Assembly: GCA_965637545.1 (NCBI GenBank)
Contig: OZ281500.1
Coordinates: 2,356,001-2,420,000, forward strand
Length of the DNA stretch: 64,000 bases
Reading direction: 5' to 3'
Source of the DNA: Phallusia mammillata
Taxonomy: Eukaryota
Below are positions 1,487 to 61,661 of the stretch, piece after piece. The position numbers and the translations under genes were made by a program. The notes under the pieces are model-generated. The model was given only the letters and a program-made list of their open reading frames with translations. It was not told where the DNA came from and did no database searches. The stretch's first letter is position 1. Each line of letters opens with the position of its first letter.

Positions 1487-4400
1487 TCAGTATGCCACAG
1501 TGTAGTTGCCATGCATACTAGCCAGTTCCATGTTGTATCTGTAAGGTGCGTCATAGAATATTGATGGTGTACAATCATAAGGTAAAGTTGGTTCAATTTT
1601 CATTTGATTTTCACAATGTGCATAGGCTGAAACAATTTCAAACATATCCACACTAAAAAAATTTTCACAAAAAAACTGGCAAAATTTGATGCCAAATTTT
1701 GCTGCCGAAAGCCCCTCTTTGTAGCGATATAGTGCAATGAAGTTTTTAATAAGGTTTACAATTGCATGGATGCTTGAATTGATATATTGTGATGTGCTTG
1801 TATAAATCAGAATGACATAGGCTTTTTTAGAATAACGAATCGCTTCTTGGTACCGGCTCATTTGAATAAGGCAAGCGGAAATACCATTATAACACCAACA
1901 GTTGTATTCAGCATACATCAGCATAAAAAAGTCTGTCTCTATTTTTGAAAAAAGAAGTATAGCTCTTTTGTAATAAATCAAAGCTTCATCCAATCTTCTT
2001 TTTTCGAACAAACCACTGGCCTTTCTGATCAGATGCATTATTTCCACTTTAAAATCTGATCGGATTTGCTTTTTTTCATTCTCGTTTAACATTTGATCAC
2101 CATAATTGTTGATTTTCTGTGTAAGTTCTTGATTAGCTGCTTCACTATAGCCCAGGATATTGTTGCACATGATGCTGGCTTCGTAAAACCCTGATTGTTG
2201 AAATGCTTCCGATAATTGTTGCAAAGCAAAATTTTTGTTCAATGAAGTTGTAAATTTGTGGTCAAAAAAGTACTGAGAAATTAATTCAATTGCTTCCATT
2301 GACCTTCCCAATTTTCTCAGACACAGAGCTTTGTTTAAAACATTACCAACACTTGTTTCACTTAAAAAGTCAGTTCTAATCTCTGGGCACTTCCATGACT
2401 TATCAAAATAAACAAGAGCCTCTTCATATTTCTCCAGAGCACACAATATACCTCCCATACGATTGTATGCAAAATTTATTGAAATATCTGATTCCTCATT
2501 GACGTGGATGGTTTGTCTTCTGTTTATGAGATCCTGACAAACAATTCTTGCTTCTTCATTTTGACCCAACCTTTCAAGGCATATTGTATAGTTTATCATT
2601 ATCGGAAAGTATTCGTCACGTATATTTTCATTCTGTGGGTCATCTTTTATTTCATCATAAGCACATTTTATGTATTTTAGAGCTTTTTTGTTGCGTCCAA
2701 GTTTTTTAAAGCAATCACCCATATCATTACTAATTTTATGCTTAGGAATGGAACATGAAACTTTAAAAAACTGATAAAAGTTTAGTTTCCTGAAGTATTT
2801 CAGGGCTCCTTTAAACTTCTTTAATTCAATCAAGCAAAGGGCACATTGCCTCATAAGTTCACATTTGGTATCAATAAGACCAAGCTGTTGCAATTTTGGT
2901 AAATTTAATTTTATTACTTTGATGCACTCTCTGTATTTCTCAAGACCATGCAAACTTTTTGCATATGAAGTAAGCAGTACAATTTGATCAGGCAGATTCT
3001 TATGGTCTGGATCATCTTTAAGTTCATGTACCAGCCTTTCAGCAAAACCATATAGTTTTAACCGTGCTGCCAGCTCCACTTCAGATATTGGTAATGGTGA
3101 AATATATATGTGATCAAATAAATGAAAGTTTTGGAAACAAATGCTAACATAGTTTTGTAGGGTCATTGCAATATTTAGCCCTTCCACAAATGCTTTAGTG
3201 CCTATGAAGGATGAAATATTTTGTATACATGATGGCATTCCATTATAATTACTTTGATGGAGAATATCATCTTGGCTTGATGCATTGCTGTACAACCTTA
3301 GTCTTGTTTCACAAGCAACTGCCAATGAAAACAGAAGTTTTTCAACCAGTGCCTTGCTTACAACATTACGTGTCTTTAAGTCATCAATAATGTCAAAACA
3401 GTTTAGTAGCTTGCTGTGGTGCAAGTACCCAAAGGCCTCGACAAACAAGGAACAACTTCTGTAAACCAATCGTTTGATGTCTAGGGTGAAAATGTTTTTG
3501 GTCCACATTATTGAGAAGAGATCGTAGTCACTTTGAACTTGCTGCTGTTTCTGCAAATTAAAAATCGGCAGATTAGCAGATTTCCGCTTGGCTTCAGTTC
3601 TAAACTCTTCAAAAACTTCTAAGTCTCCAAAAACATAACTCGATCTGCTTAACATATCGGCTAAATGATATCCATTTTTTAAATCCACTTCACTGTCCAA
3701 GTACTTTACCATTTCACTGATTGGTTTGATCAGCTCGGTTGTCCACGGCTTATTCTGTGTCTTTGTTTGTCTTCCCAATGGATTCTTACTTGCTTGAGGA
3801 GCAAATCCATCTGGACAAATTCCACATAGAGTGTATTTATCATAAAACCAATCTTCTGTTTTGTTTAAGGGATTGTTAAGACATGGAATAGCCAAGAATT
3901 TGAGTATTGTTTCCCCCAGACGAACCAAGATGATTTGAAAAACAGTTGAAAACCACTGAAAATACTCCAAATGTTTTTGATAATTGGGATCTTTCTTAAC
4001 TTTGTCTTCCAATACAATAATGCTTTCAAAATCAGAATATGGAGTAATTTCTTTTTTGGCCAATGAACCCATTCCTACCAGAGCAAACTTACAAGGTGCT
4101 TCCCCTAAGATGAACAGTGTCCGATTTGCTATAAGTTGCATAATGCTGGTGTATGTTTTTGTGACATAATCCTGTATTTTCCTTACATCTGCAACTCTGA
4201 TTTGCATTTCCCTGTTTCTTTCGATACCTTTTAAATCATCACAGATTGGTTTCAATTTGTTTAGCATGCTTTTGGTTGTTTTACGAAGCAATGTAATTTT
4301 CTGCTTCGCTTCAGCAACTGCATTGTCAGTAAATGTAGTATCTAACTTTGAAGCTTTGGCTGAAGCTAATATATCCATGCATACATCATTAAGGTCTTGT

Positions 4401-5210: not shown

Positions 5211-5213
5211 ATA

Positions 5214-8070: not shown

Positions 8071-10872
8071 TCAAAGTGTGTCTGCATGGTAAAATATGGA
8101 GGGGGAGCATTCGTAGAGTGGGATTGGTGACGTGATTTTTAACTCCCATTCACACAGGGTCAACATTTTGATAAGCAAAACAAACTTGTCTTCTACACAG
8201 CAATTCTCATACACAAACTGACAAAGTTTTATTCCATGTTTTGCGGCAGCAAGGCACTCCTCGTGGCGTCGTAGCCTTAATAAGTTTGAAACCAGAGAGA
8301 AAGCAGAAAGTACGGACATATCAAGATTTTTCAGACTTAAATATATCGACAATTGGAACGACATTTTGTAAAACCTAATTGCATCGTGTCGTCGACCGTC
8401 CTCAACCAGCTTTGCAGAAACATTCTGATGAACTACATAATGTTTTGCAAAGTCTTGTAAAGATAGCTTGGTTGTATTTTCTTTACGAAGTAGTTCCATC
8501 TTTTCATGCCAAAGTTTTTTTATTAACATTTCTGATTCTGTTAAGTGACCCACTTTTAGTAGGAAGTCAGCTTTATCCGCAAAGAAATGCTCAACTTTTC
8601 CAGAGGTCTTGCATTTTAATGCTTCGTCACAGTAAACAAGAGCTTCTTCGTATCTCTTTAAGTGGTACAGACTTTCAATTTTATGAAAAAACGCTGCGTT
8701 TAGAAATGTGTCGGTTTCCTCGGGTATACGCTCTTTTCGTATTTGGGATATTAATTCTTCATTTATCGAAAGAGCTTTGTTATAACAACCCGCACAATTT
8801 AGGCTGAAAAGAAACGGAACTAACAGTGCGCAATAACCGTAATTTGTTAAATTTATGGTAGGATCTTTTTTGGTCTCATTGTATGCGAGCTCGAAATAAT
8901 GCCGAGCCTTTTCGTAATCTTCGTGCATCATGTAGCAACCCCCAATCGTTCCGTAGGCATTCACCCTTAATTCACCTGCAATTCCATTTGAATGAACATC
9001 AGGTAACATTTCTATATATTTTAATGCTTGTCTGTGCTTTTTCAACATAGTTGCACTCCAAGCGCCCTGCATCAAGCATATAATTCGCTTACCGATTAAA
9101 CTTGGCGTATCAAGACGTGTTATTTCGTCGTCACAGATTTTGAGGACTTCTTCATATTCCCCAATTTGAGCCAAACATCCCACGCGCATTGTCTGCAAGA
9201 AACGTCGATCATCCTCATCAGTGGGTTTCCATTCATCTAATAACTTTAGAAGAAATGTGGATTCGTGCAATAAGTATGCCAGCCATACTTTACGAGATTG
9301 CGACTCCTCCAAATCAATGGGTATCTTACTTCTTGCATTTTCAAAGCAATCAATAACGTAGTCTTGGAGCGATGTTATTATATCTATTCCAACTATAACT
9401 GCTTTGTTGCCTATATTTTTCGTAAAGTATTCAGTACCCGATCGAGATGAAGAATATGGGCGATGTACAATGTCATTTTGTCCTGAAGTCCTGCTGTACC
9501 ACCTCAAACGCATTTCACATGCTATTGCCAACGAAAACTGAAGTTTGCACTGTAACATTTTATCGATAACACCACGATCTGCTAGTTCGTCAATGATTTC
9601 AAAACAGGTGAAATTGTAACATTTGTGCAAACGACCCAAAGCCAACACGAAAAGTGAAGAACTCCTTAACACAACACGCTTTATGTCTACTTTTCCATAT
9701 AAATCAAAGGTCTTTGGTTGGTAAAGGTCGAAATATTCTTTGATATTTTGCTGTGCCCGTTGATTGAAGATGGGCATCTGACTTAGTTTTTGCTGGGTTT
9801 TTGATTTAAACTGTTCAGAAACAACAACATCTCCAAATACGAAACAAGTTGTAGTCAACATATCTGCTAAATGATATCCGTTTTTCAAATCCTCTTCTGT
9901 TTCCAAGTACTTCACCATCTCACTGACTGGTTTGATCAGCTCAGTTGTCCACGGCTTCTTCTGTGTCTTTGTTTGTCTTCCCAATGGATTCTTACTTGCT
10001 TGAGGAGCAAAGCCATCAGGACAAATTCCACATGGAGTGTATGTGTCATAAAACCAATCTTCTTTTTCACTCAAGGGATTGTTAAGACATGGAATAGCCA
10101 AGAATTTAAGTATAGTTTCCCCCAGACGAACCAGTATCAATTGGAAAACAGTTGCAAACCATCGAAAGTAATCTAAAACAACATTGTAATTCTCTTGGTT
10201 TTTAATTTCTTCTTCCAATACAATGATGCTCTCAAAATCAGAATATGGAGTAACTTCTTTCTTGGCCAACGAACCCATTCCTACCAGAGCAAACTTGCAA
10301 GGTGGCTGTCCCATTATATAAACAGTGCGTCTTCCAATAAGACCCATTGTTTGCTTGTATGTTTCAGTAACATAATCCTGTATTTTCCTTACTTGCTTAA
10401 CTCTCTGCCTCTGTATTGCATTTAGTTCTTCGCCTTTCAAATCATCAGATATTGGTTTCAGCTCACTAAGTCTTATTTTTGTATTTTCACGAAATGTTTG
10501 AATTTGTTTTTTGGTTTCGGCAACAGCTTTATTTATCAGCTCTGCATCTGGATTTGCAGCGTTTGCCAACTTCATAATATGCGTGCACACGTCATCAAGA
10601 TCTCTTTTAATGTCATCTGCATTGTCAGGCTGCCTTAACACAGCTGATGTCATTAGAGCAACACTTTGAATGAGACTGATCTTATCTGGACCTTTTTCTT
10701 TGTACGCAAGTCCCAACTGATGCAAAGTTTTTGCTGATTCTTTTGGATCTTTTTCCACGCCATTGGGATAACATTGTTTCTTCAACTTAGTTGCTAAATC
10801 GTTGATTACTACGCCTGTTATTATGTCGTTCAAGCAATCGGATAAATTTTCGCATGCGGACATTTTTAGCAT
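8071..10872 (-). CDS. NTase-TPR protein, copy 2 (933 aa)
   Basis: Intact ORF with GSLAKKEVTPYSDFE, long active-site loop (GRQTKTQKKPWTTELIKP), TPRs and PSIFYHA. Acceptor TTTATTTGCAG|G ends at 10890. Confidence 0.92.
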   Translation of the reverse strand: MLKMSACENLSDCLNDIITGVVINDLATKLKKQCYPNGVEKDPKESAKTLHQLGLAYKEKGPDKISLIQSVALMTSAVLRQPDNADDIKRDLDDVCTHIMKLANAANPDAELINKAVAETKKQIQTFRENTKIRLSELKPISDDLKGEELNAIQRQRVKQVRKIQDYVTETYKQTMGLIGRRTVYIMGQPPCKFALVGMGSLAKKEVTPYSDFESIIVLEEEIKNQENYNVVLDYFRWFATVFQLILVRLGETILKFLAIPCLNNPLSEKEDWFYDTYTPCGICPDGFAPQASKNPLGRQTKTQKKPWTTELIKPVSEMVKYLETEEDLKNGYHLADMLTTTCFVFGDVVVSEQFKSKTQQKLSQMPIFNQRAQQNIKEYFDLYQPKTFDLYGKVDIKRVVLRSSSLFVLALGRLHKCYNFTCFEIIDELADRGVIDKMLQCKLQFSLAIACEMRLRWYSRTSGQNDIVHRPYSSSRSGTEYFTKNIGNKAVIVGIDIITSLQDYVIDCFENARSKIPIDLEESQSRKVWLAYLLHESTFLLKLLDEWKPTDEDDRRFLQTMRVGCLAQIGEYEEVLKICDDEITRLDTPSLIGKRIICLMQGAWSATMLKKHRQALKYIEMLPDVHSNGIAGELRVNAYGTIGGCYMMHEDYEKARHYFELAYNETKKDPTINLTNYGYCALLVPFLFSLNCAGCYNKALSINEELISQIRKERIPEETDTFLNAAFFHKIESLYHLKRYEEALVYCDEALKCKTSGKVEHFFADKADFLLKVGHLTESEMLIKKLWHEKMELLRKENTTKLSLQDFAKHYVVHQNVSAKLVEDGRRHDAIRFYKMSFQLSIYLSLKNLDMSVLSAFSLVSNLLRLRRHEECLAAAKHGIKLCQFVYENCCVEDKFVLLIKMLTLCEWELKITSPIPLYECSPSIFYHADTL

Positions 10873-15260: not shown

Positions 15261-18027
15261 TTAGCAGCTCCGAAATGTTCCCGCATGGTAAAATATGGAG
15301 GGAGTGCAAACGCAGGGGAGATTTGTTGGTCTGATTCCTAATTCCTCCTCGCAGCGTGAAAATATGTGAACGAGTTTAACAGAGTTTCCCTCCATCCAGT
15401 AGTTCTTACATGCAAATTGCCAAAGTTTTAATCCATGTTTTGCGGCGGCAAGACACTCCTCGAAGCGTCGTAAAACGAGTAAAATTGTGACAAGTAACTG
15501 TGAAGCTTTTAGAAAAATTTTGATCGATTTAAGGCTCCCTAAATGAAATGATTTTTTGGCAAACCAAATTGCATCATTTGGTCGTTTATCTTCAAAATGC
15601 GATTCAGCAATGGCTTGATATACTAAACAGCAGAAGTCTGAATATTCTATCGTAGGTAGCTCCGCTTGAAACTCCATACGAATATGTTCTATCCTTTCTT
15701 GCCAAAAATCTTTCATGAAACTTTCTGCTTCTGCTAACCTCCCCAATTTTATCAAGCATTCAACTTTAGGAGAAACTACAAACATTGCATTGGCACTTGT
15801 GAAGGTATTTATTATAATGTTCCTTGATTTGTCAAGATACACAAGAGCTTCTTCGTATTTCTTCAATCCACGCAGACAGACGCCTTTGGAAAAAAATGCC
15901 CCATTTATATCAGGATCGGTGTCTTCATTTACATGCCGTTTTCGAATTTCGGATATCCATTCTTCATGTACCGAAAGGGCTTTTTCATAACAACATGATA
16001 AATTGAGGCACAAGCTATACTCTTGCAAAAGTTGTTTATAAGACTTATCGCTGCAGGTATGAGATAGTTCTTTCGATTGATTGTATGCTCGCTCTAAATA
16101 TTTTCGCGCATTTGTGTTGTCTTCAAGCTTCACATAGCATCTTCCCATGTGTGCATTGATCTCTATTTGTGATACAGACTGTATTCCTCGGGAAGAGTCC
16201 ACTAACATCAGTTTTGCATATTCCAATGCTTCTTTAAACCTGTTTAAACGAAATAGGCATCTGTGGGATAGGTGCAAGTACAAACCTCTCATGTCAACTG
16301 CAGGCGAAGTGAGTCGGGTCAGTTCGGTTTCACAAACTTCGAGACTTTTTTTATTTTCACCGCATTCGTGCAAAGACTTCGCATTAATATACTGTAGTTG
16401 ATCACGGACATGCTCAATCCTGCACTCTGCCGAGTCTTTACATTCCTTTATTAGTTTTAAAGCGAGACTATGCATATCAAATTGATATGCCAGCACAACA
16501 GTTCTAAACTGCGAGTCTAAAATAAACTTTTTTTTTCGTTTTTTCAATAAAGGATGATACGACATACTGTTGAAGTGGTTCAATGATAATAATTAATCCA
16601 TCTACAACTGCTCTGCTTCCTATGTCTTTGGAAACCTTTTCCATACTCGTTGGCCGACCGATTAATAATTCTGGAATTATAATGTCGCTTTGGCTTGAAG
16701 TCTTGCTGTACCATCTTAAACGGATTTCACATGCAACTGCCAAAGAAAATTGAAGTTTATCATGTAACACCTTGTCTATAATTTCGCGATCACTTAGTTC
16801 TTTAAGGATATTAAAACAGTTTATTTTCTTACAATCGTACAAACGACCAAGAGCCAAAACGAAAAGCGTACAACTCCTTAACGCAACACGTTTTATATCC
16901 ACTTTATGATCTGCTTTCAGGCCTACTACTTTGTATAGATCATAATCTTTTTTAATATTTTGCTGCACTCGTTGGTTAAAGATGGGGATCTGGTTTATTT
17001 TTTCTTCATTTTTTGAGTCAAACTCTTTGTAAACAGAAAAATCGCCGAACACAAAACAAGTTGTGGTCAACATATCTGCTAAATGATATCCGTTTTTCAA
17101 ATCCTCTTCTGTTTCTAAAATCTCCACCATTTTACTGACTGGTTTAATCAGCTCGATTGTTGTGTTTCCCAAGGGATTTTTGCTAGCTTGAGAAGCAAAT
17201 CCATCAGGACAAATACCACATGGGGTATATGCGTCATAAAACCAGTCTTCTTTTTTGTTTAAGGGATTGTTAAGACATGGAACAGCCAAGAATCGTAGTA
17301 ATGTTTCACCCAAACGAACCAGTATCATTTGGAAAACAGTTGCAAACCACCGAAAGTAATCTAAAACAATATTGTAATTCTCTTGGTTTTGAATTCCTTG
17401 CTCCAACACAATGATGCTCTCAAAGTCAGAATATGGAGTAATTTCTTTTTTGGCCAGTGAACCCATTCCTACCAAAGCAAATTCGCACAGTGGTTTCCCC
17501 ATAATGTGAACAGTATGTGTGGCAATAAAATTCATTACATTTCTAAACGTTTCAGTGACATAATTCTGTATTTCCCGTACTTGTTCAACTCTTTGCTTTC
17601 GCACGTTATTAAGTTCTTTACCTTTCAAGTCATCAGACATTCGTTTCAGCTTACTAAGTTTGTCTTTTGTGTTTTCACGAAGTGTTTGAATTTGTGCTTT
17701 GGTTTCGGCAACAACTTTACTCACCAGCTCTGCATCTGGATTTGCAGCGTCAGCCAACTTCATAATATGCATGCACACGTCATCAAGATCTTTCTTAATA
17801 TCATCTACATTGTCGGGCTGCCTCAACACAGCTGATGTCATTAAAGCAACACTTTGAATGAGACTGATCTTATCTGGACTTTTTTCTTTGTACACAAGTC
17901 CCAACTGATGCAAAGTTTTTGCTGATTCTTTTGGATTAATTTCCTCTCCATTGTCATAACATTGTTCATGTCTTAACTTATTTGCTAATTCAGTTTCTCT
18001 ACTCATGTCAACTCTCGCCATAAACAT
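15261..18027 (-). pseudogene. NTase-TPR copy 3, split by one frameshift at the enzyme/TPR junction (507-aa enzyme ORF plus TPR ORF)
   Basis: ORFs 16504-18027 and 15261-16583 overlap in different frames. Relative to copy 7 there are 19 nt instead of 21 between the homologous Thr and Asp/Glu codons (2-nt loss near 16518-16522), giving TAG at 16504-16506. Both halves are otherwise open. Acceptor TTTTCTTTGTTTTAG|G ends at 18066. Confidence 0.85.
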
Positions 18028-20585: not shown

Positions 20586-20644
20586 CTGCCTCCCAATCAC
20601 AACGTTTTTTAAAAACTGCCTCCCAATCACAACGTTTTTCAAAA
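20586..20644. repeat. Two-copy 30-bp tandem duplication
   Basis: CTGCCTCCCAATCACAACGTTTTT(T/C)AAAA repeated twice. Confidence 0.85.
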
Positions 20645-47511: not shown

Positions 47512-50355
47512 CTAAACAAATGTAATTTCTAAGTCTTCGTTAAAAAAATTCTCAGCATGGTAAAATATGGAGGGAGTGTGATGATACGGTAGTGTTGTTT
47601 CGACTTTTAACTGCCGTTCGCAACGTGCAAATATGTTGGCAATGGTAACAAAATTTTCTTCAACACAGCAATTCTCATACACAAATTGACAAAGTTTAAT
47701 TCCATGTTTTGCGGCAGCAAGTCCTTCTTTGTATCGTTTTACTTTGAATAAAATTGCTGCAAGACCAAGGGCAACACGTACCGACAATTTCACCGATTTT
47801 TGGCAACCCGAGTAAAATGATAAATGAAACGACTTTTTGGCAAACTTAACTGCATAGTGGAGTTGGCCATCCTTATAATAGAACTTAAAAATTTCATGAT
47901 AAATAAGACTGCAGAATTCAGAGTATTCTTTTACACAGAGCCCCGTGTCATTTTTTTTACGAAGCAATTCTATCTTTTCCTGCCAAACATGTTTTAAGAA
48001 ACTTTGTGCTTTTGATAAACGACCCAGTTTTTTCAGGCATGCATATTTCTGATGAGCAAACAAGACAATGCTTCTTCCTTTTTCGTTGAAAAACTTACAC
48101 TTCCACGATTTGTCAAGGTAAACAAGGGCTTCTTCATATCTCTTTAAGCCAAATAGAATGAAACCTCTATCATAAAGTGCCCTACTTAGTAGTTGGTCGG
48201 TTTCCTCTCGCACATGCAATTTTCGTCTTTCTGATATTAATCTTTCATTAACCGAAAGAGCATTGTGATAACAACTTAAACGAAGAAGACATGTTGTGTA
48301 GTCAGCCAACAGTCCAGTATACTGGCGAATGTCTGCGGGTTTGGAAAGTCTGTCTTTTCTATCGTTGTATGCAAGCTTGAAGTAATATTGCGCTTTTTCG
48401 TCGTCATGAAGGCCGTAATAACACTTTCCCATACATGTGTTGATATCTACTATTGATACGGATTGCATTCCTTTAGAATGGACCTCAAATAAATTTCTTG
48501 CATATTCCAAAGCCTCTTCGTATTTGTTCAATTCAATTAGGCATAAGCAGCATTGTTTCATGTGATAAGCACAAATATCGGTTAAACCAGGCGAATCGAG
48601 TCTTGCTAATTCATCTTCACTGACCTTCAGGCCTTCTTTGAATTTGCCCATATTACTCAAACAACCAGCGTACAATAACTGCAATTCTCTGCGTTGTTCT
48701 TCATTTTTACACATATGCAGGTTTTTGCATTCTATCAACAACTTTGAAGCCAATTTGTGCATTTGCAATATACAAGCAAGCTTTGGTGCTTCCAATGGCG
48801 ATTCCACAAAATTGATTTTTTTCCTTCTATCCCTTTTTAAGTATTCAACAACATATTTTTGAAGAGATAATGAGACGTTTATTCCATCTACTACCGCTCT
48901 GCATCCAACTGTTTTTGTAAAGTCCTCCATATTTGATGGCTCGCCGAAATACGTTTGGGGATACAAAATGTCATTTTGACCTGACGTCGTGCTGTACCAC
49001 CTTAAACGCATTTCACATGCAACTGCCAACGAAAATTGCAGTTTTCCATGTATTGTCTCATCCAAAATAGCACGATCTCTCAATTCATCAAGAATATCAA
49101 AACAGGTTAAATTCTTACAGTTGTACAAATGACCTAATGGTAAAATGAAAAGAGAGCATCTCCTTAATGCCACTCGTTTGATATCTATTTTGTGAAGTGA
49201 AAACATTTTCACATTGTATAGTTTATAATCTTTTTCAATATTTTGTTGAACTCGTTGGTTAAAACTAGGGATCTGATTTAGCTTGTGTTGAATTTCTAAT
49301 TCAAATTCATTGAAAACAAAATAATCACCGTATACAAAGCAAGTTGTGGTCAACATATCTGCTAAATGATATCCGTTTTTTAAATCCTCTTCTGTTTCCA
49401 AGTACTTCACCATCTCACTGACTGGTTTAATAAGCTCAGTTGTCCACGGCTTCTTCTGTGTCTTCGTTTGTCTTCCCAATGGATTCTTACTTGCTTGAGG
49501 TGCAAATCCATCAGGACAAATTCCACATGGAGTATGTGCGTCATAATACCAATCCTTTTCTTTATTTAACGGATTATTAAGACATGGAATAGCCAAGAAT
49601 TTAAGTATAGTTTCTCCCAGACGAACTAATATCACTTGGAAAACAGTTGCAAACCATCGAAAATATTCCAAACTTTTTGGGTATTTTGAGTAATTCTGAA
49701 TTCCTTCTTCTAACACAATAATGCTCTCAAAGTCAGAATAAGGAGTGACCTCTTTATTGGCCAATGAACCCATTCCTACCAAAGCAAACTTACAAGGTGC
49801 TTTTCCCATTATGTCAACAGTGTGTCTTCCAATAAGACCCATTATTTGCTTGTATGTTTCAGTAACATAATCCTGTATGTCCTTTACTTGCTTAACTCTT
49901 TGCCTCCGTATTGCATTAAGCTCTTCTCCTTTTAAGTCGTCAGACATTGGTTTCAGCTCACTAAGTTTATCATTTGTGTTTTCACGAAGTACTTGAATTT
50001 GTGCTTTGGTTTCGGCAACAGCTTTACTCACCAGCTCTGCATCTGGGTTTGCAGCATTAGCCAACGTCATAATATGCATGCACACGTCATCAAGATCTTT
50101 TCTAATGTCATCTGCATTTTCGGGTTGCCTTAACACAGCTGATGTCATTAAAGCAACACTTTGAATGAGACTGATGTTATCTGGACTTTTCTCTTTGTAC
50201 GCAAGTCCTAACTGATGCAAAGTTTTTGCTGATTCCCTTGGTTCAATTTCCACTCCATTGTCATAACATTGTTTTCTCAACTTAGTTGCTAAATCGCTGA
50301 TGACTACTTCTGTTATTATATCGTTTAAGCAATCGTACGAATCTTTGCATAGCAT
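47512..50355 (-). CDS. NTase-TPR protein, copy 8 (947 aa from MLCKDSYD)
   Basis: The ORF track starts at a GTG (50403); the first in-frame ATG, homologous to other copies, is at 50355. GSLANKEVTPYSDFE, TPRs and PSIFYHA present. Confidence 0.9.
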   Translation of the reverse strand: MLCKDSYDCLNDIITEVVISDLATKLRKQCYDNGVEIEPRESAKTLHQLGLAYKEKSPDNISLIQSVALMTSAVLRQPENADDIRKDLDDVCMHIMTLANAANPDAELVSKAVAETKAQIQVLRENTNDKLSELKPMSDDLKGEELNAIRRQRVKQVKDIQDYVTETYKQIMGLIGRHTVDIMGKAPCKFALVGMGSLANKEVTPYSDFESIIVLEEGIQNYSKYPKSLEYFRWFATVFQVILVRLGETILKFLAIPCLNNPLNKEKDWYYDAHTPCGICPDGFAPQASKNPLGRQTKTQKKPWTTELIKPVSEMVKYLETEEDLKNGYHLADMLTTTCFVYGDYFVFNEFELEIQHKLNQIPSFNQRVQQNIEKDYKLYNVKMFSLHKIDIKRVALRRCSLFILPLGHLYNCKNLTCFDILDELRDRAILDETIHGKLQFSLAVACEMRLRWYSTTSGQNDILYPQTYFGEPSNMEDFTKTVGCRAVVDGINVSLSLQKYVVEYLKRDRRKKINFVESPLEAPKLACILQMHKLASKLLIECKNLHMCKNEEQRRELQLLYAGCLSNMGKFKEGLKVSEDELARLDSPGLTDICAYHMKQCCLCLIELNKYEEALEYARNLFEVHSKGMQSVSIVDINTCMGKCYYGLHDDEKAQYYFKLAYNDRKDRLSKPADIRQYTGLLADYTTCLLRLSCYHNALSVNERLISERRKLHVREETDQLLSRALYDRGFILFGLKRYEEALVYLDKSWKCKFFNEKGRSIVLFAHQKYACLKKLGRLSKAQSFLKHVWQEKIELLRKKNDTGLCVKEYSEFCSLIYHEIFKFYYKDGQLHYAVKFAKKSFHLSFYSGCQKSVKLSVRVALGLAAILFKVKRYKEGLAAAKHGIKLCQFVYENCCVEENFVTIANIFARCERQLKVETTLPYHHTPSIFYHAENFFNEDLEITFV

Positions 50356-51720
50356 TTCTTGTTTGTGTTTGACGTTACAGCTTTCGTACAAAACCACAAA
50401 CACATTTAAGTTTGTTGATATGTTACTTAGTTTAACTAATCACCCTGTTGAAAAACAAGAGCGATTGTATATCCTTTAGCCAGGTTCACCATTTTATTAT
50501 TCATTCTGATTTAGCACTGAATAAATTCAAAATCTGTTTCTGGGCGTTAATGCTACCTGACAGTTTAACTGGTGAGCTGCTTGTACATTGTGCTGGATAA
50601 ATATGATTGTCCAATAAAGCTTTTGGTTAATGATTTACGTTGAGTAAACCTATAACGCCTCGCTTGACAACTGAACATAAAGCGGTCTCGGGGAACATTA
50701 AAGAATGGTTCATCACAAAAGCATACCACATGGCTTACTGTTTGGCTTCGAGTGAAGTTCTACAAAATTTAAGATTATCTGAACTGACAAAATGCGTGGT
50801 TACCAACCTTTGTCGACGAATTCCTCCCTTAACAATTCAAACATTTTTATCCCTGCCCAATAGACTACATAGTATAGATGCTATACAAAGATCATTAAAA
50901 TTTAGGTCTTTTTTTCTTGATAGGTTATATTCTGAGAGCTGAACTGTGTATTTACGCACCACATTTCCTCCTAGGTTGGAAACCATTGACCTACACAATT
51001 TCAAGTTAATACAATGTTACATAAAAAAATGTTCTCGACAGGTCATAAGTACGACCTAAGTTTTTTCCAACACGCTTTACAGACGCAGGATGGCCCCACT
51101 AAACGTTTTTATACTTTTCGATAGATACAACCTCAAAAAACTTACGCTGGGAACTAAATGAAAGGGATTGTACAACGTACATCGGCCACAAGCACAACGT
51201 TTTATGCCTGCATCGAAATCGACAGGTTAACGTTCTTATGGATGTTTTTAGACGACCGATTGTCCCAGCTCATCCTTTCTGTTTTGCAACAGGGCGTACC
51301 AGTTGCCGCGCACACACCAACGCAAAACACTTGCTGCCGGGGTTGTATGCGGCACGTACTTTCCTTACACTAGCGGACTTATTTTTTGCTTACTGAGTAC
51401 ATTTAGTGGCTGTGTACTTTAAAGTTGGCATCAGTGTAAAACACGAGTTTGGTGGATATAGTAGTTTGTTTACCTTTACGTTTGTGCACTTGGACCATTA
51501 GTTCCAGGGGCCATATTAGGGCAAATGGGCATAACAGTCAATGGACTTACCCCTGACTTATACCTTTTTCACGATTGTAATCCTTCCCATTGATCTATGC
51601 CCTTGGGACGGTATTGTTCAGGTTTTATCACTGTTAACTAAAACTGTTGGTTTGTTTCTGTTATTGGTGTTGTACAGATGCAAATCAAACGTATTTTTAC
51701 TTGATGAAATGTTGTTAAAT
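50356..51720. repeat. 5' flank of copy 8, paralogous to the 5' flank of copy 9 (~61662-63050)
   Basis: Colinear shared blocks, e.g. GCTACCTGACAGTTT.ACTGGTGA and AAAACACGAG..TGGTGGATATAGTAG...GATTGTAATCCTTCCCATTGATCTATG. Confidence 0.85.
50445..50556 (-). other. Predicted 5' UTR intron of copy 8 (112 nt)
   Basis: CAG|GTAGCA donor at 50556 and TCTTGTTTTTCAACAG|G acceptor at 50445. Both are conserved in copy 9. Confidence 0.6.
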
Positions 51721-52419
51721 AGATTTGTGTAAGTGACTGTGTACCTTGAATAATGCAACCATTAGATGTTAGTAGTGAAACTGTGTTTAATTGTTTTTGT
51801 GTCTCTACCTCAAACCAACAGAAGCCAAAAAATAAGTTTTTTTAAAAAAAAACTTTGTGCCAAGGCTATTGCTCTTTCGTAAATTGCTTTTGACCAGTAT
51901 ACATATATGTTTCAAGCTATATGGAGCTATATGGCTATATGGCATGTGTTATACACGTTGTGCTCACGAATTATAAACCCTCGTATTCAGGGAGTCTAAC
52001 GGCTCCTTGTATAGATTGAGGTTCGAATTCTTGTTCGAATTGAGGTTCCAGCTAATGAGAATTAGTTTGTCTGTGGGATTGACAATGTAAACAAATATAA
52101 GTTTACAACACTGTTATGCCTTTACAAGTTTAATAGTGTATGATAACATAAGCTTTGTACAGTTTAACTATTAATAGTTCATTCAAAATACAAACAGAAA
52201 ATTGGGCAATCAAACGCCGGAGAAATAATGTTGATATAAATTTCCAGAAACTTTAGTAAACTAATTCGAAACACTAATGCAAAGAATTATTGTAGAAAAA
52301 CAAAGAATTTTTGGACAAGTGTAAACGTTTGTGCTTTCAAATTAGACAATTATTAAACTTTTATCATTAAAATTCATGTAATTGTTTTTTACCAAGCTAA
52401 CCAATTTTAACTTATTTGT

Positions 52420-53444
52420 TTACAAACGACAAAGGGGCACAGGGCGTCCATAAGTCTCGCGTGTTGTGAACATCCCGATATCAAGGGGAACCCGTTTAGA
52501 TTTGGTCGAAACAGTCCATCCGATACCAGTGTCACTCGAAGGATGGCTTTGATACCATTGTGTATAAACGTTTCCACCACTGGAACTCACAGTATTTCCA
52601 TTCTATGAGTAAACATCACCAAATAGTAAACTCAAATCCAAAATCCACAAGGTTTTTTTGGTGCTTGAAGTTGAATTTGGCAAAGTGACATAGTAGGCCT
52701 AGTGTAACTCAATAGTTTATTCTTTTATCAATGGGTTCCGGTTTTATGCAAAAAAAATGAAATTGAAATGGTATAAGTGGGTTTTACAGTGTATGCATGT
52801 AGACCTATCACAATGCAGTCTACCTGGTGCATAGAAGCAAGCCACACGTCGACATAATCGAATGTCGGTTGATCAACGTACATTATCCATACTTTCTGTA
52901 TGTACTTGAAAAGTACATCATAGATTTCAGAAGTTTCTATATCAACCAATGTAGCTCCGTATGAGCTGCAAACACTCGCGGCTGCTGACTTTCCACCGTT
53001 ACTGGCTGTTTCTACAATCGATGGTAGCCAATAGCAATGACCTCTGTACACAACTCCTGAACATATTCTTTTTTCTGCCATTAAAAACATGTTTAAGGAT
53101 TTTTTTTATAACCTGTAGTTGCAGTCGTAAATACAAAATATAATTGACCGTTGTTATAGTCATGTCATACCGTTTATTATTTCCTCGATACGATGATCAA
53201 TTCTGGTCCAGTTTACCATAGGTTCAGGACCAGTAGCTCCTTTCAAACCTTGTGGTCCTTGTTTTCCGGGTCTGCCTGGAGGACCCCGTATTGTTGACTG
53301 GTTCGAAGGAATTGACAATTGGGACACAAACAGCGAGTCAAGGGGTCGGCAAACTAAATAATTCTGTTGGTGATTCAAATGGCTATAACACTTGTATACA
53401 ACTATCAAGAGGAGAGTTAGCCTACATAACACGTACAGAGGCAT
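52420..53444 (-). CDS. Collectin-like secreted protein: signal peptide + 7 Gly-X-Y triplets + C-type lectin-like domain (235 aa, 3 exons)
   Basis: Exons 53444-53171 (G|GTATGA, phase 1), 53074-52824 (AATGGCAG|AA, CAG|GTAGAC, phase 0) and 52602-52420 (CTCATAG|AAT...CRL TAA) splice in frame to 708 nt. Sequence includes MPLYVLCRLTLLLIVVYKCYS, GPPGRPGKQGPQGLKGATGPE, ICSG..RGHCYW..A..VC..YGATLVDIET..IYD.L..YI..VW..VWL..W...PLC. Confidence 0.88.
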
Positions 53445-58730: not shown

Positions 58731-61661
58731 TTACAGTGGTTTGATTTGCAACTTTCGATCATGCAGAGCTTTTTTGAGCATCTTGTGTGCCGCACATTTT
58801 GCAAAAACGTAACTACGTAATGGAAATGTATGAATTGAACTTGAATTGGTCAACCGCTTGTGCAGAAGAGATCCTGCATGGTAAAATATGGAGGGAGTGA
58901 ATTCGTAGGGTAGAGTTGGTGGCCTGATTTTTAACTCCCATTCACACTTCGTCAACAGCTTGACAATTTCCACAAAGTTTTCTTTCACACAGCAGTTGTC
59001 ATGCACAAACTGATAAAGCTTTATTCCATGTTTTGCGGCAGCAAGGCATTCCTCGTAGCGTTGTAGCCTGTGCAAGATTACAACCACATAGCATGCACCA
59101 GTTAGGGACATTTCAGGATATTTTATGTTTTCCGGATAAATCGACAATTGAAACACAACCTTGTAAAACCTAACTGCATCGTGGAGTCGGCCGTACTTAA
59201 CCAGTTCTGTAGATATTTCAAAATAAAGTACAAAGATTTGGGAATAATATGTACCAAACAGATCGGTTGTATTTTCTTGAAGTAATTTGATCGTTTCTTG
59301 CCACAGTTTTTTCAATAATATTTCTGCTTCAATTAATCGGTCCAAACGTATCAACGAATTAGCTTTATACCCAAGCAAAAGGTGAATTCTTCCTGGGGTT
59401 CCCCTTTTTAATGCTTTGTCACAGTAAAAAAGAGATTCTTCATATCTCTCTAGTTGGTACAGACCTGCGCATCTATGAACAAATGCCACTTCTAAAAATG
59501 AGTCGGTTTCCTCATCTACGTGCTCTTTTAGTCGTTCGGATATCAATTCTTGATTTACCGAAAGAGCGTTGACATAACAACCCATATAGTTTAGGCAATA
59601 AGTAAAGTTAATCAACATATAAAAATAAAAGTGATTGTCTAACTTTGTGGCAGGATCCATTTTTGTTTCATTGTATGCGAGCTTAAGAGCATTCAGCGCT
59701 GTTTCGTAGTCTTCATGTAACATGTGGCAATATCCAATAACCGTGTTGATGTGCATCCTTGATTGACTCGTAATTTCATTTAAATCAACTTCAGATAACA
59801 TTTCTATGTATTTCAATGCTTGTCCGTGCCTGTTTAACATACTTGAACATACGCAGCATTGCACCAAGAAATGGACACGGCATTGGACTAAACTTGGCGA
59901 ATCAAGTCGGGTTAATGCGTCATCACAGATTTTAAGTGCTTCCTCATATTTCCCAACTTGAAACAAACATACCACATGTAAAAATTCCCATTCGTTTTTC
60001 TCGTTTAAATCCTGGTGAGAGATTTTACATTTATCAATTAGTTTTAAAGCGAACGCAAACAAATGCAAACTGTATGCCAGCGTCGCTGCATTACTTGGTG
60101 ACTCCTCAAAATCAATGGTTGCCACACTTCTTTCTCCTTTAAAGCAATCAACGACGTAATGTTGAAGTGCTACTGAGATATTTATTCCGCTTATAACTGC
60201 CCTGTTGCCGATGTCTTTCGCAATGTATTCCATATCCGATAATTGACACTCAGTCAATGGGTGATGTAAAATGTCATCTTGACCTGAAGTCCTGCTGTAC
60301 CGTCTCAAACGCATTTCACATGCAACTGCTACCGAAAATTGAAGTTTACCGTGCAATGTCTCATTCATTAAACGACGATCCAGCAGTTCGTCAAGGATAT
60401 CAAAACAAGTTAACTTGTTACATTTGTACAAACGACCTAGAGCAAAAACGAAAAGCGAACAACTTCGTGAAACAACACGCTTTATGTCTACTTTTCCAAA
60501 CAAATTGCTGGGCTTTATTTGGAAGAGATCGAAATCTTTTTTAAGATTTTGTTGTGCTCGTTGGTTGAAGATGGCCATCTGATTTAGTTTTTGTTCGACT
60601 TTTGACTCAAACTCTTCAGAAACAATAGAATCCGCAAATACAAAACAAGTTGTGGTCAACATATCTGCCAAATGATATCCATTTTTCAAATCCTCTTCTG
60701 TTTCCAGGCACTTTACCATCTCACTGACTGGTTTAATTAGCTCCATTGTCCACGGCTTGTCTCGTGTCTTTGTTTGTCTTCCCAATGGATTCTTGCTTGC
60801 TTGAGGAGCAAACCCATCAGGACAAATTCCACATGGAGTGTATGCGTCATAAAACCAATTTTCTTCCTTGCTCAAGGGATTGTTAAGACATGGAATTGTC
60901 AGAAATTTGAGTAAAGTTTCACCTAGGCGAACCAGTTTCATTTGGTAAACTGTTGCAAACCATTCAAAATATTCCAAAACGTTTAAGTAATTAGGCTGAA
61001 TGTGAACTCCTTCCTCCAACACAATAATGCTCTCGAAGTCAGAATATGGAGTAACTTCGTTTTTGGCCAACGAACCCATTCCTACCAAAGCAAACTTACA
61101 AGGTGATTTTCCCATTATGTAAAGCGTATGTTTTGCGATAACACTCATTATGTCTTTGTATGTTTCAGTAACACAATCCTGTATTTTCCTCACTTGTTCA
61201 ACTCTCTGCCTCCGTATTGCATTAAGCTCGATTTCTTTCAGGTCATCAGATATTGGTTTTAATTCACTAAGATTATCTTCTGTGTTTTCACGAAATCTTT
61301 GAATATTTTTTTTGATTTCGGCAACAGCTTTACTCACCAGCTCTGTATCGGGATTTGCAGCGTTAGCCAACGTCATGATATGCATGCACACGTCATCAAG
61401 ATCTTTACTAATGTCTTCTGCATTGTCAGGTTGCCTCAACACAGCTGATGTCATTAAAGCAACACTTTGAATGAGACTGATCTTGTCTGGACTTTTCTCT
61501 TTGTACACAAGTCCCAACTGATGCAAAGTTTTTGCTGATTCTTTTGGATCTTTTTCCTCTCCATTGTCATAACATTGATTTCTCAACTTAGTTGCTGTAT
61601 CACTGATGACTACGTCTGTTATTATATCATTCAAGCAATCGTACGAATCTTTGCATAGCAT
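58731..61661 (-). CDS. NTase-TPR protein, copy 9 (976 aa from MLCKDSYD, extended C-terminal tail)
   Basis: The ORF track starts at a GTG (61718); the homologous ATG is at 61661. GSLAKNEVTPYSDFE, TPRs and PSIFYHA followed by a ~44-aa tail. Predicted 5' UTR intron 61758-61871 (CAG|GTAGCA...TTTTCTAACAG|G). Confidence 0.9.
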   Translation of the reverse strand: MLCKDSYDCLNDIITDVVISDTATKLRNQCYDNGEEKDPKESAKTLHQLGLVYKEKSPDKISLIQSVALMTSAVLRQPDNAEDISKDLDDVCMHIMTLANAANPDTELVSKAVAEIKKNIQRFRENTEDNLSELKPISDDLKEIELNAIRRQRVEQVRKIQDCVTETYKDIMSVIAKHTLYIMGKSPCKFALVGMGSLAKNEVTPYSDFESIIVLEEGVHIQPNYLNVLEYFEWFATVYQMKLVRLGETLLKFLTIPCLNNPLSKEENWFYDAYTPCGICPDGFAPQASKNPLGRQTKTRDKPWTMELIKPVSEMVKCLETEEDLKNGYHLADMLTTTCFVFADSIVSEEFESKVEQKLNQMAIFNQRAQQNLKKDFDLFQIKPSNLFGKVDIKRVVSRSCSLFVFALGRLYKCNKLTCFDILDELLDRRLMNETLHGKLQFSVAVACEMRLRRYSRTSGQDDILHHPLTECQLSDMEYIAKDIGNRAVISGINISVALQHYVVDCFKGERSVATIDFEESPSNAATLAYSLHLFAFALKLIDKCKISHQDLNEKNEWEFLHVVCLFQVGKYEEALKICDDALTRLDSPSLVQCRVHFLVQCCVCSSMLNRHGQALKYIEMLSEVDLNEITSQSRMHINTVIGYCHMLHEDYETALNALKLAYNETKMDPATKLDNHFYFYMLINFTYCLNYMGCYVNALSVNQELISERLKEHVDEETDSFLEVAFVHRCAGLYQLERYEESLFYCDKALKRGTPGRIHLLLGYKANSLIRLDRLIEAEILLKKLWQETIKLLQENTTDLFGTYYSQIFVLYFEISTELVKYGRLHDAVRFYKVVFQLSIYPENIKYPEMSLTGACYVVVILHRLQRYEECLAAAKHGIKLYQFVHDNCCVKENFVEIVKLLTKCEWELKIRPPTLPYEFTPSIFYHAGSLLHKRLTNSSSIHTFPLRSYVFAKCAAHKMLKKALHDRKLQIKPL

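What the first reader, a model, noticed from the sequence alone, without database searches (positions are those of the whole stretch)
1487..61661. Expanded tandem array of GlnD/DUF294-type nucleotidyltransferase-TPR genes: candidate undescribed animal immune sensor-enzyme system
Seen: nine same-strand paralogues in 60 kb. All eight copies that retain the region keep GSL..KE/NE.TPYSDFE and PDG..ASKNP. The N-terminal ~470 aa align residue for residue, while the TPR half diverges strongly between copies. Established: hG[GS]x9-13Dh[DE]h is the Pol-beta NTase signature shared by cGAS, OAS, CD-NTases, GlnD/GlnE and MNT antitoxins. The GSxAxxExTxxSD spacing, the ASxNP motif and the DIKR/LR helical bundle are of the GlnD/GlnE/DUF294 type rather than the cGAS/Mab21 or OAS type, and GlnD/GlnE nucleotidylate protein tyrosines. 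Inference: a conserved enzyme, a variable repeat sensor, birth-and-death evolution and a neighbouring lectin are the architecture of NLR-like innate receptors. The TPRs may recognise diverse ligands and switch on protein AMPylation/UMPylation or nucleotide second-messenger synthesis. I do not recognise a characterised animal family with this architecture.
Basis: partly seen in the sequence, partly recalled or inferred. Interest (0 to 1): 0.92.

Follow-up and report, generated by a model that had tools for sequence, protein, structure and literature searches.

The report
Tandem AMPylase-like enzyme–TPR gene array
A sea-squirt-type genome carries a tandem cluster of nine intron-free genes that join a conserved bacterial-style protein-tagging enzyme (GlnE/DrrA type) to a fast-evolving repeat domain whose binding groove is under diversifying selection. 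This looks like an undescribed animal sensor-enzyme family, but an immune role is not shown.

Summary
There are nine minus-strand paralogues: six intact, one with a single frameshift, one with a single in-frame stop, and one internally deleted fragment. All full-length copies keep GSLA..E.TPYSDFE, PDGFA.QASKNP and D[IV]KR.

The enzyme assignment holds. Pfam DUF294 scores above its cut-off in 6 of 6 intact copies. A confident AlphaFold model (pLDDT 89.5) matches E. coli GlnE and the Legionella DrrA AMPylase at Z 22-25, with the next hit at 10.7. The loop aligns with the G-x11-D-x-D catalytic loop of GlnE and GlnD. It is not cGAS/OAS-like and has no NTPase, so "NLR-like" is only an analogy.

The selection prediction is supported among the paralogues. 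M0 omega is 0.32 for the enzyme and 0.70 for the TPR. In the TPR, 7% of sites have omega 4.4 (LRT 47.7). All 13 such sites lie on the A helices, mostly at TPR positions 2, 5, 6 and 9 of the groove.

The window copies form one recent clade that grew by segmental duplication. The family is hugely expanded in tunicates and amphioxus. It also occurs in octocorals and in intracellular bacteria (Holosporaceae, Parachlamydiaceae).

I found no paper on it. Reviews list only FICD and SelO as eukaryotic AMPylases. Enzyme activity, substrates and any immune role are untested.

First readers noted the same family in the adjacent window and at two other sites in this genome (unchecked).

The parts
1487..4612 (-). 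Copy c1. Intact, 1041 aa, the most divergent copy. It has a ~98-residue extra TPR insertion.
   Evidence: ORF; Pfam DUF294 31.3 bits (cut-off 21) and TPR_12 57.7 bits; alignment
8071..10872 (-). Copy c2. Intact, 933 aa. Used as the reference for models and residue numbering.
   Evidence: AlphaFold models
10552..10872 (-). c2 residues 1-107: N-terminal helical-hairpin cap resembling TPR or 14-3-3. It contains the segment with unusually low synonymous divergence.
   Evidence: VIA-align matches to LGN TPR and 14-3-3 at Z 7-10 over residues 1-111; pS 0.16-0.19 against ~0.45-0.6 elsewhere
9373..10551 (-). c2 residues 108-500: GlnE/DrrA/DUF294-type nucleotidyltransferase module, made of the NTase core plus a HEPN-like helical domain.
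   Evidence: Z 25.3 (1v4a GlnE-N), 24.9 (6yx5_B DrrA), 22.2 (3k7d GlnE-C); Foldseek E 6e-7 to 2e-5; residues 368-500 match HEPN/MNT-partner structures at Z ~8-9
10231..10281 (-). c2 residues 198-214, GMGSLAKKEVTPYSDFE: the G-[GS]-x10-D-x-E catalytic loop.
   Evidence: hhalign places it on the GlnE D173/D175, GlnE D701/D703 and GlnD SDVD loops; G200, S201, D212 invariant and E214 nearly invariant in 48 sequences
8143..9300 (-). c2 residues 525-910: TPR array of ~8-9 helical hairpins. The sites under diversifying selection lie on the A helices.
   Evidence: DSSP of the full-length model; Pfam TPR hits; codon models
8080..8103 (-). Conserved C-terminal tail motif [ST]PSIFY[HD]A, in a low-confidence and probably disordered tail.
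   Evidence: Alignment; C[TS]PS[ILV][FY]Y-like motif also present in the nearest foreign relatives P0001, P0003 and P0009; pLDDT <50 at residues 920-933
15261..18027 (-). Copy c3. Full length but broken by one frameshift near 16517-16525. Sister of c6; the two share an 8-residue deletion.
19243..19628 (-). Internally deleted fragment that keeps only residues ~30-88 and ~360-418. One half is 94% identical to c8 and the other 93% to c4.
   Evidence: tblastn; blastn
24791..27607 (-). Copy c4. Intact, 938 aa.
31823..34750 (-). Copy c5. Full length with a single in-frame stop at codon 305 (33836-33838).
39607..42426 (-). Copy c6. Intact, 939 aa.
47512..50403 (-). Copy c7. Intact; the likely ATG start is at 50355.
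58731..61718 (-). Copy c8. Intact; the likely ATG start is at 61661.
52407..53444 (-). Neighbouring multi-exon collectin-like gene: signal-like N-terminus, a short collagen-like Gly-X-Y stretch and C-type lectin exons. Only weak profile support.
   Evidence: Pfam Collagen E 0.002 and Lectin_C E 0.012, both below cut-off; ORF translations; a decayed similar exon at 21325-21554

Best explanation
Shown:
- The window holds a young, species-specific tandem array of single-exon genes that grew by segmental duplication.
- Each gene encodes a protein with no obvious signal peptide (read by eye only). It has four parts: a short helical cap, a GlnE/GlnD/DrrA/DUF294-type Pol-beta nucleotidyltransferase module with an intact catalytic loop, an array of ~8-9 TPR hairpins, and a conserved tail motif containing tyrosine.
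- The enzyme half evolves under purifying selection.
- The exposed face of the TPR A helices, which forms the ligand-binding groove, evolves under diversifying selection among the copies.

Inferred mechanism:
- Each paralogue is a protein nucleotidylyltransferase. The characterised members of this fold clade add or remove AMP or UMP on protein tyrosines, so AMPylation or UMPylation is the most likely chemistry.
- The variable TPR groove decides which peptide or protein is bound. That partner could be the substrate to be modified, or a ligand that switches the enzyme on.
- The combination of lineage-specific expansion, gene loss and groove diversification fits a role in a biological conflict. 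Innate immunity is the leading candidate; allorecognition or another self/non-self system is also possible. That step is inference only.
For: Copies and lesions.

Enzyme identity:
- Pfam DUF294 scores above its cut-off in 6 of 6 intact copies.
- The model of residues 1-500 has pLDDT 89.5 and pTM 0.91.
- Foldseek top hits are DrrA and both halves of GlnE. VIA-align gives Z 25.3, 24.9 and 22.2 against a next-best 10.7.
- All 30 top Swiss-Prot models are GlnE.
- The catalytic loop aligns to GlnE and GlnD.
- Invariant G200, S201, D212, E252, D276, D286, K398 and R455 across 48 homologues.
- DUF294_C scores above its cut-off in amphioxus relatives.

Selection:
- NG86 omega is 0.29 for the enzyme module and 0.48 for the TPR.
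- Codon models give M0 omega 0.32 against 0.70. TPR M2a places 7% of sites at omega 4.4, with LRT 47.7; the maximum null LRT in 16 simulations was 8.3.
- 13 of 13 selected sites lie on A helices (binomial p 4e-6). Mean posterior omega is 1.27 on A helices and 0.62 on B helices.
- The result holds without the two broken copies (LRT 14.7, 8 of 8 sites on A helices) and with segment-specific trees.
- The sites map to TPR positions 2, 5, 6 and 9.

Array history:
- Homologous flanks between units.
- The window copies form one clade with 100% support.
- The family has 1494 clusters at 50% identity. It is found in Ciona, Clavelina, Branchiostoma and octocorals.
Against: - No expression, induction, activity or substrate data exist.
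- No fusion to a known immune signalling domain was seen, here or in the amphioxus relatives checked.
D286 is the likeliest from spacing and motif similarity to GlnE VDMRLRP.
- The best structural match is the adenylyl-REMOVING half of GlnE, so the direction of the reaction is open.
- Gene conversion is evident and can inflate site-model likelihood-ratio tests.
- The codon code is my own, uses NEB rather than BEB posteriors, and ran on only seven paralogues.
- Diversification among paralogues can also reflect subfunctionalisation on endogenous substrates.
- The lectin neighbour is weak, circumstantial evidence.
Confidence: 0.6

Rival explanations
1. These are endogenous regulatory enzymes rather than immune proteins. 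After duplication, each paralogue specialised on a different host substrate or client, with the TPR acting as a targeting module as in FICD or in Hsp70/90 co-chaperones. The groove changes would then reflect subfunctionalisation.
For: The TPR-enzyme architecture is common in housekeeping co-chaperones. No immune domains are fused. Overall TPR omega is below 1.
Against: The family is absent from vertebrates and patchy across animals. The window copies are a species-specific clade with recent losses. 7% of TPR sites have omega ~4 and are concentrated on the binding face. This pattern is unusual for stable endogenous partnerships.
Confidence: 0.2
2. The genes belong to a conflict system other than immunity, or are selfish. 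They could descend from, or have been donated to, effectors of intracellular bacteria, and now act in allorecognition, gamete or self-incompatibility, or a toxin-antidote drive.
For: The same enzyme-TPR architecture and family-specific motifs occur in Holosporaceae 'Namur' (33% identity over 196 aa), in Parachlamydiaceae and in the 50-member Neochlamydia NEX2 family (PMC4209131). Bacterial, octocoral and amphioxus sequences intermix in the tree. DrrA, a fold relative, is a host-targeting effector (PMC3710099).
Against: Tunicate sequences form one well-supported clade on a long stem, so any transfer is old. No mobile-element genes were seen in the flanks. There is nothing specific linking the genes to allorecognition loci.
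Confidence: 0.12
3. The enzyme does not add nucleotides to proteins. It could remove them, as the GlnE N-terminal half does, or it could be a catalytically silent scaffold.
For: The top VIA-align hit is the deadenylylating domain of GlnE (1v4a, Z 25.3). The second acid is Glu rather than the usual Asp.
Against: DrrA, an AMP-adding enzyme, matches equally well (Z 24.9). D-x-E occurs in active Pol-beta enzymes such as kanamycin nucleotidyltransferase (my recollection, not tested here). Invariant active-site residues and an omega of 0.2 in the core argue against a dead enzyme.
Confidence: 0.08
4. The enzyme is a nucleotide second-messenger synthase, like cGAS, OAS or CD-NTases, switched on when the TPR binds a ligand.
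For: It belongs to the same Pol-beta superfamily, and the sensor-plus-NTase logic resembles cGAS and CBASS.
Against: No Mab21, OAS or CD-NTase profile hit. No PADLOC defence-family hit above noise. No cGAS or OAS structure appears among the top PDB matches, whereas GlnE and DrrA stand far above everything else. No member of the GlnE/GlnD/DrrA clade is known to make cyclic or linear oligonucleotide signals.
Confidence: 0.05

Closest known systems
E. coli GlnE (glutamine synthetase adenylyltransferase / adenylyl-removing enzyme) and GlnD (PII uridylyltransferase)
   Same: Same fold over ~310 aligned residues (Z 22-25). The G-x11-D-x-[DE] loop aligns. The following HEPN-like helical domain carries a D-I-K motif; GlnD has PDIK.
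   Different: Sequence identity is only 9-13%. There is a single module rather than two. There are no ACT, HD or PII-binding regions. The module is fused to a TPR array, the host is an animal, the gene family is large, and there is no link to nitrogen control.
Legionella DrrA/SidM N-terminal AMPylase (6yx5, 3nku)
   Same: Best Foldseek hit (E 6e-7) and Z 24.9. Weak Pfam SidM_N hits. DrrA is a protein-tyrosine AMPylase used in a host-microbe conflict.
   Different: DrrA carries GEF and PI4P-binding domains rather than TPRs, and it is a secreted bacterial effector. Identity is 14%.
Pfam DUF294 / DUF294_C proteins (bacterial CBS- or cNMP-linked putative nucleotidyltransferases)
   Same: PF03445 scores above the gathering cut-off in all intact copies (26-31 bits against 21). 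Atlas structural neighbours at TM ~0.55.
   Different: DUF294_C is below its cut-off in the window copies. The sensor module is a TPR array instead of CBS, cNMP or Cache domains. DUF294 itself has no known function.
Neochlamydia NEX2 family (F-box - DUF294 - TPR; Domman et al. 2014, PMC4209131) and the Holosporaceae/Parachlamydiaceae DUF294-TPR proteins
   Same: Same order of domains (DUF294 then TPR) and same large lineage-specific expansions. The Holosporaceae protein shares the family motifs EITPYSDFE, LGET, WFYD and DG..P.A.K.PLG.
   Different: No F-box or OTU domain in the animal proteins. The hosts are bacteria, where the proteins are presumed to be secreted effectors. The direction of any gene transfer is unresolved.
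NLR/STAND innate receptors and other expanded repeat receptors of invertebrate deuterostomes
   Same: Conserved signalling part plus variable repeat part, tandem arrays, pseudogenes, and diversifying selection on the ligand-binding face.
   Different: No NACHT or NB-ARC NTPase and no Death, CARD, TIR or PYD adaptor domain. The output would be an enzymatic modification rather than oligomerisation-driven adaptor recruitment.
FICD/HYPE (TPR + Fic AMPylase) and SelO, the only eukaryotic AMPylases listed in reviews (PMC12409994)
   Same: FICD also joins TPRs to an AMPylase. The expected chemistry, NMP on a protein side chain, is the same.
   Different: The catalytic fold is unrelated (Fic or kinase-like against Pol-beta). 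FICD is a single-copy, conserved gene rather than an expanded family.

Membership tests
Pol-beta superfamily nucleotidyltransferase, GlnE/GlnD/DrrA/DUF294 clade | hG[GS]-x9-13-D-x-[DE] catalytic loop | tested here: met
   GMGSLAKKEVTPYSDFE is present in all 8 full-length copies. It aligns to the GlnE and GlnD loops. G200, S201 and D212 are invariant and E214 is nearly invariant in 48 sequences.
Pol-beta superfamily nucleotidyltransferase, GlnE/GlnD/DrrA/DUF294 clade | Profile match to a family model above the curated threshold | tested here: met
   PF03445 DUF294 scores 26.3-31.5 bits against a cut-off of 21 in 6 of 6 intact copies. The GlnE and SidM_N models match only weakly.
Pol-beta superfamily nucleotidyltransferase, GlnE/GlnD/DrrA/DUF294 clade | Three-dimensional fold of the NTase core plus the following helical domain | tested here: met
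   The predicted model (pLDDT 89.5) matches 1v4a, 6yx5_B and 3k7d at Z 25.3, 24.9 and 22.2 over 301-314 residues, with the next hit at 10.7. This rests on a prediction, not a solved structure.
Pol-beta superfamily nucleotidyltransferase, GlnE/GlnD/DrrA/DUF294 clade | Third catalytic carboxylate on a neighbouring strand | tested here: inconclusive
   E252, D276 and D286 are invariant candidates. D286 in GICPDGFAP resembles GlnE VDMRLRP in context. No residue-level structural alignment or model coordinates were available.
Pol-beta superfamily nucleotidyltransferase, GlnE/GlnD/DrrA/DUF294 clade | C-terminal HEPN-derived 'substrate-binding' helical domain (DUF294_C / GlnD_UR_UTase) | tested here: inconclusive
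   PF10335 scores only E 0.08-0.12 in the window copies but is above its cut-off in amphioxus relatives (34.7 and 49 bits). Residues 368-500 match HEPN structures at Z 8-9, which is in the grey zone for helical bundles.
Pol-beta superfamily nucleotidyltransferase, GlnE/GlnD/DrrA/DUF294 clade | Nucleotidyl transfer to (or removal from) a protein side chain | not testable with these tools
   Needs biochemistry.
TPR repeat proteins | Tandem 34-residue helix-turn-helix repeats matching TPR profiles | tested here: met
   TPR_12 scores above its cut-off in c1 (57.7), c4 (40.2) and c7 (31.3), and near the cut-off in the others. The full-length model shows ~8-9 helical hairpins. The consensus positions 4, 7, 8, 11, 20, 24 and 27 are recognisable in several repeats.
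NLR / STAND receptors | Central NACHT or NB-ARC P-loop NTPase | tested here: not met
   No such Pfam hit in any copy or in the amphioxus relatives checked. The fold search of residues 1-500 shows no P-loop NTPase.
cGAS / OAS / CD-NTase (Mab21-type) signalling nucleotidyltransferases | Mab21, OAS or CD-NTase profile or fold match | tested here: not met
   No profile hit. No cGAS or OAS chain among the top PDB matches.
Neochlamydia NEX2 family | N-terminal F-box (± OTU) before DUF294-TPR | tested here: not met
   No F-box or OTU hit in the window proteins. Only the DUF294-TPR core is shared.

The most novel reading that the evidence does not exclude
These genes would be a new class of animal cytosolic pattern-recognition or self/non-self receptors. 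A hypervariable TPR groove captures pathogen-derived or allogeneic peptides. A GlnE/DrrA-type enzyme then signals or disarms by AMPylating or UMPylating proteins. That would make them a third, massively expanded family of eukaryotic AMPylases, shared with or exchanged with intracellular bacteria.
Probability: 0.3. Interest if true: 0.92.

Novelty: new variant of a known kind. Interest (0 to 1): 0.78.

Why it matters
Reviews of protein AMPylation list only two eukaryotic writer enzymes, FICD and SelO, and treat the GlnE/DrrA adenylyltransferase type as bacterial (PMC12409994). This window shows that invertebrate chordates carry hundreds of genes of that type, each joined to a TPR array.

In this array the binding groove diversifies while the catalytic site stays fixed. 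That evolutionary signature is shared with immune receptor families.

If activity and induction are confirmed, this would add a new enzymatic output to animal innate recognition. It would also offer a natural library of TPR specificities, and an example of a conflict module shared between animals and their intracellular bacteria.

If the genes turn out to be endogenous regulators, they would still be the first large animal family of Pol-beta-type protein nucleotidylyltransferases.

Tried and rejected
- Sequence searches of PDB with one protein and with the 48-sequence profile gave nothing significant.
- hhalign against single E. coli GlnE and GlnD sequences aligned only the catalytic loop. It could not settle the third acid.
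- Model coordinates are not exposed, so I could make no active-site geometry check and no direct concave/convex surface mapping. I used helix A/B assignment and the TPR register instead.
- PADLOC and NCBIfam gave only noise-level hits.
- Rfam found no family at gathering score in the window. At 43200-43900 it found only a hairpin-like sub-threshold match and no hammerhead.
- Literature searches for DUF294, PF03445, GlnE/DrrA plus TPR/metazoan, Branchiostoma plus nucleotidyltransferase, and uridylyltransferase plus Ciona found no description of the animal family.
- I rejected bacterial contamination. The window is 32-39% GC. It holds a multi-exon collectin-like gene. The copies sit inside a tunicate-only clade.
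- I rejected retroposition as the way the array grew, because the flanks of different units are homologous and collinear.
- The species could not be named. The nearest named relatives are from Clavelina and Ciona, at 35-47% identity.
Full report
**What is in the window**

The window is AT-rich (32-39% GC). It holds a series of long minus-strand ORFs of 933-1041 codons. A tblastn of these proteins against the window finds nine related units.

- Six are intact: c1 1487-4612, c2 8071-10872, c4 24791-27607, c6 39607-42426, c7 47512-50403 and c8 58731-61718.
- c3 (15261-18027) is full length but has one frameshift near 16517-16525.
- c5 (31823-34750) is full length but has one in-frame stop at codon 305.
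- A short remnant at 19243-19628 keeps only residues ~30-88 and ~360-418.

The first ~500 columns are nearly gap-free. The C-terminal half is much more divergent, and c1 has a ~98-residue insertion there.

**Identity of the enzyme half**

- Pfam DUF294 (PF03445) scores 26-31 bits against a cut-off of 21 in all six intact copies. TPR models hit the C-terminal half.
- Sequence searches of PDB gave nothing significant.
- An AlphaFold model of c2 residues 1-500, built on a 48-sequence alignment, is confident (pLDDT 89.5, pTM 0.91).
- Foldseek's only significant PDB hits are the Legionella DrrA AMPylase and both halves of E. coli GlnE.
- VIA-align gives Z 25.3 (GlnE N-terminal domain), 24.9 (DrrA) and 22.2 (GlnE C-terminal domain) over ~300-314 residues. 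The next hit is at 10.7.
- All 30 best Swiss-Prot models are GlnE.
- Residues 1-111 look like a TPR or 14-3-3-type helical cap. Residues 368-500 resemble HEPN domains. This agrees with the published view that the helical domain after GlnD/GlnE/DUF294/DrrA nucleotidyltransferases is HEPN-derived (PMC3710099).
- hhalign against E. coli GlnE and GlnD, fetched from NC_000913, places FALVGMGSLAKKEVTPYSDFE on the G-x11-D-x-D loops. D212 and E214 correspond to GlnE D173/D175 and D701/D703.
- Across 48 homologues, G200, S201, D212, E252, D276, D286, K398 (the DIK lysine) and R455 are invariant.

D286 in GICPDGFAP is the best candidate, by analogy with GlnE VDMRLRP. No cGAS, OAS or CD-NTase signal was seen.

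**The repeat half**

The full-length c2 model (pLDDT 82.8, pTM 0.76) shows eight to nine helical hairpins between residues ~553 and 910. These are followed by a low-confidence tail carrying the conserved motif [ST]PSIFY[HD]A. A similar C[TS]PS[ILV][FY]Y motif ends the repeat region in the closest foreign relatives.

**Selection**

Pairwise Nei-Gojobori estimates give a median omega of 0.29 for the enzyme module (0.20 in the core) and 0.48 for the TPR half. Close pairs reach up to 0.87.

I wrote a Goldman-Yang codon likelihood (M0, M1a, M2a with F3x4 frequencies) and ran it on c2-c8. c1 was left out because its synonymous sites are saturated.

| Region | M0 omega | M2a positive class | LRT M2a vs M1a |
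|---|---|---|---|
| Enzyme | 0.32 | 1.2% of sites (one site) | 16.0 |
| TPR | 0.70 | 7% of sites at omega 4.4 | 47.7 |

Sixteen data sets simulated under the fitted M1a gave LRTs of 8.3 or less and recovered the simulated parameters, which checks both the code and the test.

All 13 sites with posterior above 0.8 fall on the first (A) helix of a hairpin and none on the B helices or loops (binomial p 4e-6). Mean posterior omega is 1.27 on A helices, 0.62 on B helices and 0.91 in loops.

I set the TPR register from the conserved G15/Y17/A20 positions. On that register the sites are at position 2 (four repeats), 5, 6 (two repeats) and 9 (two repeats). This is the face of helix A opposite the packing residues 4, 7, 8 and 11. 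In TPR superhelices that face lines the ligand-binding groove. From my own recollection, positions 2, 5, 9, 12, 13 and 33 were reported as the hypervariable ligand-contact positions of TPRs (Magliery and Regan 2005); I did not check this here.

The signal survives removal of the two broken copies (LRT 14.7, 8 of 8 sites on A helices). It also survives the use of separate trees for three segments, where the central segment gives LRT 30.7.

Caveats:
- There are only seven paralogues.
- Site posteriors are NEB rather than BEB.
- Gene conversion is evident (next section).
- Divergence among paralogues shows functional diversification, not necessarily an arms race.

**History of the array**

- Intergenic regions of different units are homologous and collinear. 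Examples are 10873-15260 with 42427-47511, 50406-51668 with 61719-63043, and 30878-31822 with 57758-58730. The array therefore grew by segmental duplication, not retroposition.
- The pairing of flanks does not follow the coding-region tree. c3 and c6 have less synonymous divergence in the TPR (0.26) than in the enzyme half (0.52), whereas most other pairs show the reverse.
- Synonymous divergence drops to 0.16-0.19 in alignment columns 51-100, even when c1 is included, against ~0.45-0.6 elsewhere. All of this points to recombination or gene conversion, which contributes to the uniformity of the N-terminal half.
- In a maximum-likelihood tree of the enzyme module, the six window copies form one clade (100% SH-aLRT) inside a tunicate-only clade (100%). 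The expansion is therefore species- or genus-specific.

**Wider family**

- An exhaustive phmmer search finds 1494 clusters at 50% identity, 403 of them below E 1e-30.
- Named members come from Clavelina lepadiformis, Ciona intestinalis and three Branchiostoma species. In Branchiostoma some proteins hold up to three modules.
- Other members come from octocorals (Paramuricea, Xenia, Dendronephthya).
- In Clavelina two DUF294 genes lie next to each other, and the gene asked for spans more DNA than its CDS needs. In the closest metagenomic relatives the gene is again a single ORF.
- The same architecture and family-specific motifs occur in a Holosporaceae bacterium (1295 aa, 33% identity over 196 residues) and in Parachlamydiaceae.
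- The architecture matches the description of the 50-member Neochlamydia NEX2 family, F-box - DUF294 - TPR (PMC4209131).
- Bacterial, octocoral and amphioxus sequences intermix in the tree. Horizontal transfer is therefore likely, but its direction is unresolved.

**Literature**

Seven full-text searches found no paper describing the animal family. The Aravind-lab paper on metazoan and bacterial immunity domains does not mention it. A 2025 review names only FICD and SelO as eukaryotic AMPylases and treats the G-x11-D-x-D adenylyltransferase type as bacterial (PMC12409994). Databases carry only automatic names, such as 'Protein-PII uridylyltransferase N-terminal domain-containing protein', or misnomers driven by the TPRs, such as KLC1, TTC28 and OGT.

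**Interpretation**

The following are shown:
- the copies and their lesions;
- the fold and catalytic loop;
- purifying selection on the enzyme against diversifying selection on the TPR groove;
- segmental duplication with conversion;
- lineage-specific expansion;
- relatives in intracellular bacteria.

The following are inferred:
- protein AMPylation or UMPylation as the chemistry, based on the characterised members of the fold clade;
- the TPR groove as the determinant of substrate or activating ligand;
- a role in a biological conflict.

The immune-sensor reading is plausible but untested. The single collectin-like neighbour adds little. The genes are not NLRs (there is no NTPase) and are not cGAS-like. 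First-stage notes say the array continues just beyond the window and that further copies exist elsewhere in this genome. I did not check this.

Noticed in passing
window 4431-4534 in c1 and the equivalent ~150 nt in every copy (alignment columns ~51-100; c2 residues ~43-85): Synonymous divergence falls to 0.16-0.19 here, even against the otherwise saturated copy c1, compared with ~0.45-0.6 elsewhere. This suggests either a gene-conversion hotspot or a constraint at the nucleotide level. The peptide (SPDK.SLIQS.AL...) is also the most conserved stretch across species.
   Followed up: partly
window 52407-53444 (-), and 21325-21554: A multi-exon collectin-like gene with a signal-like start, a short Gly-X-Y collagen-like run and C-type lectin exons ending in a CPFVVC-type motif. 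Pfam support is below cut-off. A ~69% similar collagen-like exon remnant lies at 21325-21554.
   Followed up: partly
window 19243-19628 (-): The internally deleted copy is a mosaic. One half is 94% identical to c8 and the other 93% identical to c4, which is closer than any two full-length copies are to each other. It points to recent non-allelic recombination.
   Followed up: partly
window 10873-15260 vs 42427-47511; 4613-8070 vs 22239-24527; 50406-51668 vs 61719-63043: Whole intergenic blocks are collinear between units at 70-86% identity, but their pairing disagrees with the coding-sequence tree. The repeat units are therefore recombinant mosaics.
   Followed up: partly
The only result is a sub-threshold match to a long-hairpin miRNA precursor model (30 bits against a cut-off of 160), so an inverted repeat is all that is supported.
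   Followed up: partly
c2 residues 924-931 (window 8080-8103) and equivalents: A conserved tail motif [ST]PSIFY[HD]A lies in a predicted disordered C-terminus and is shared with the nearest foreign relatives. Enzymes of this fold clade modify tyrosines, so it could be an auto-modification or pseudo-substrate site. This is pure speculation.
   Followed up: no
L003:39-3587 (Holosporaceae bacterium 'Namur'): The gene just upstream of the bacterial DUF294-TPR gene encodes an 1182-aa pentapeptide-repeat protein. A second DUF294-TPR-like paralogue (P0256) lies on the same 22-kb contig.
   Followed up: no
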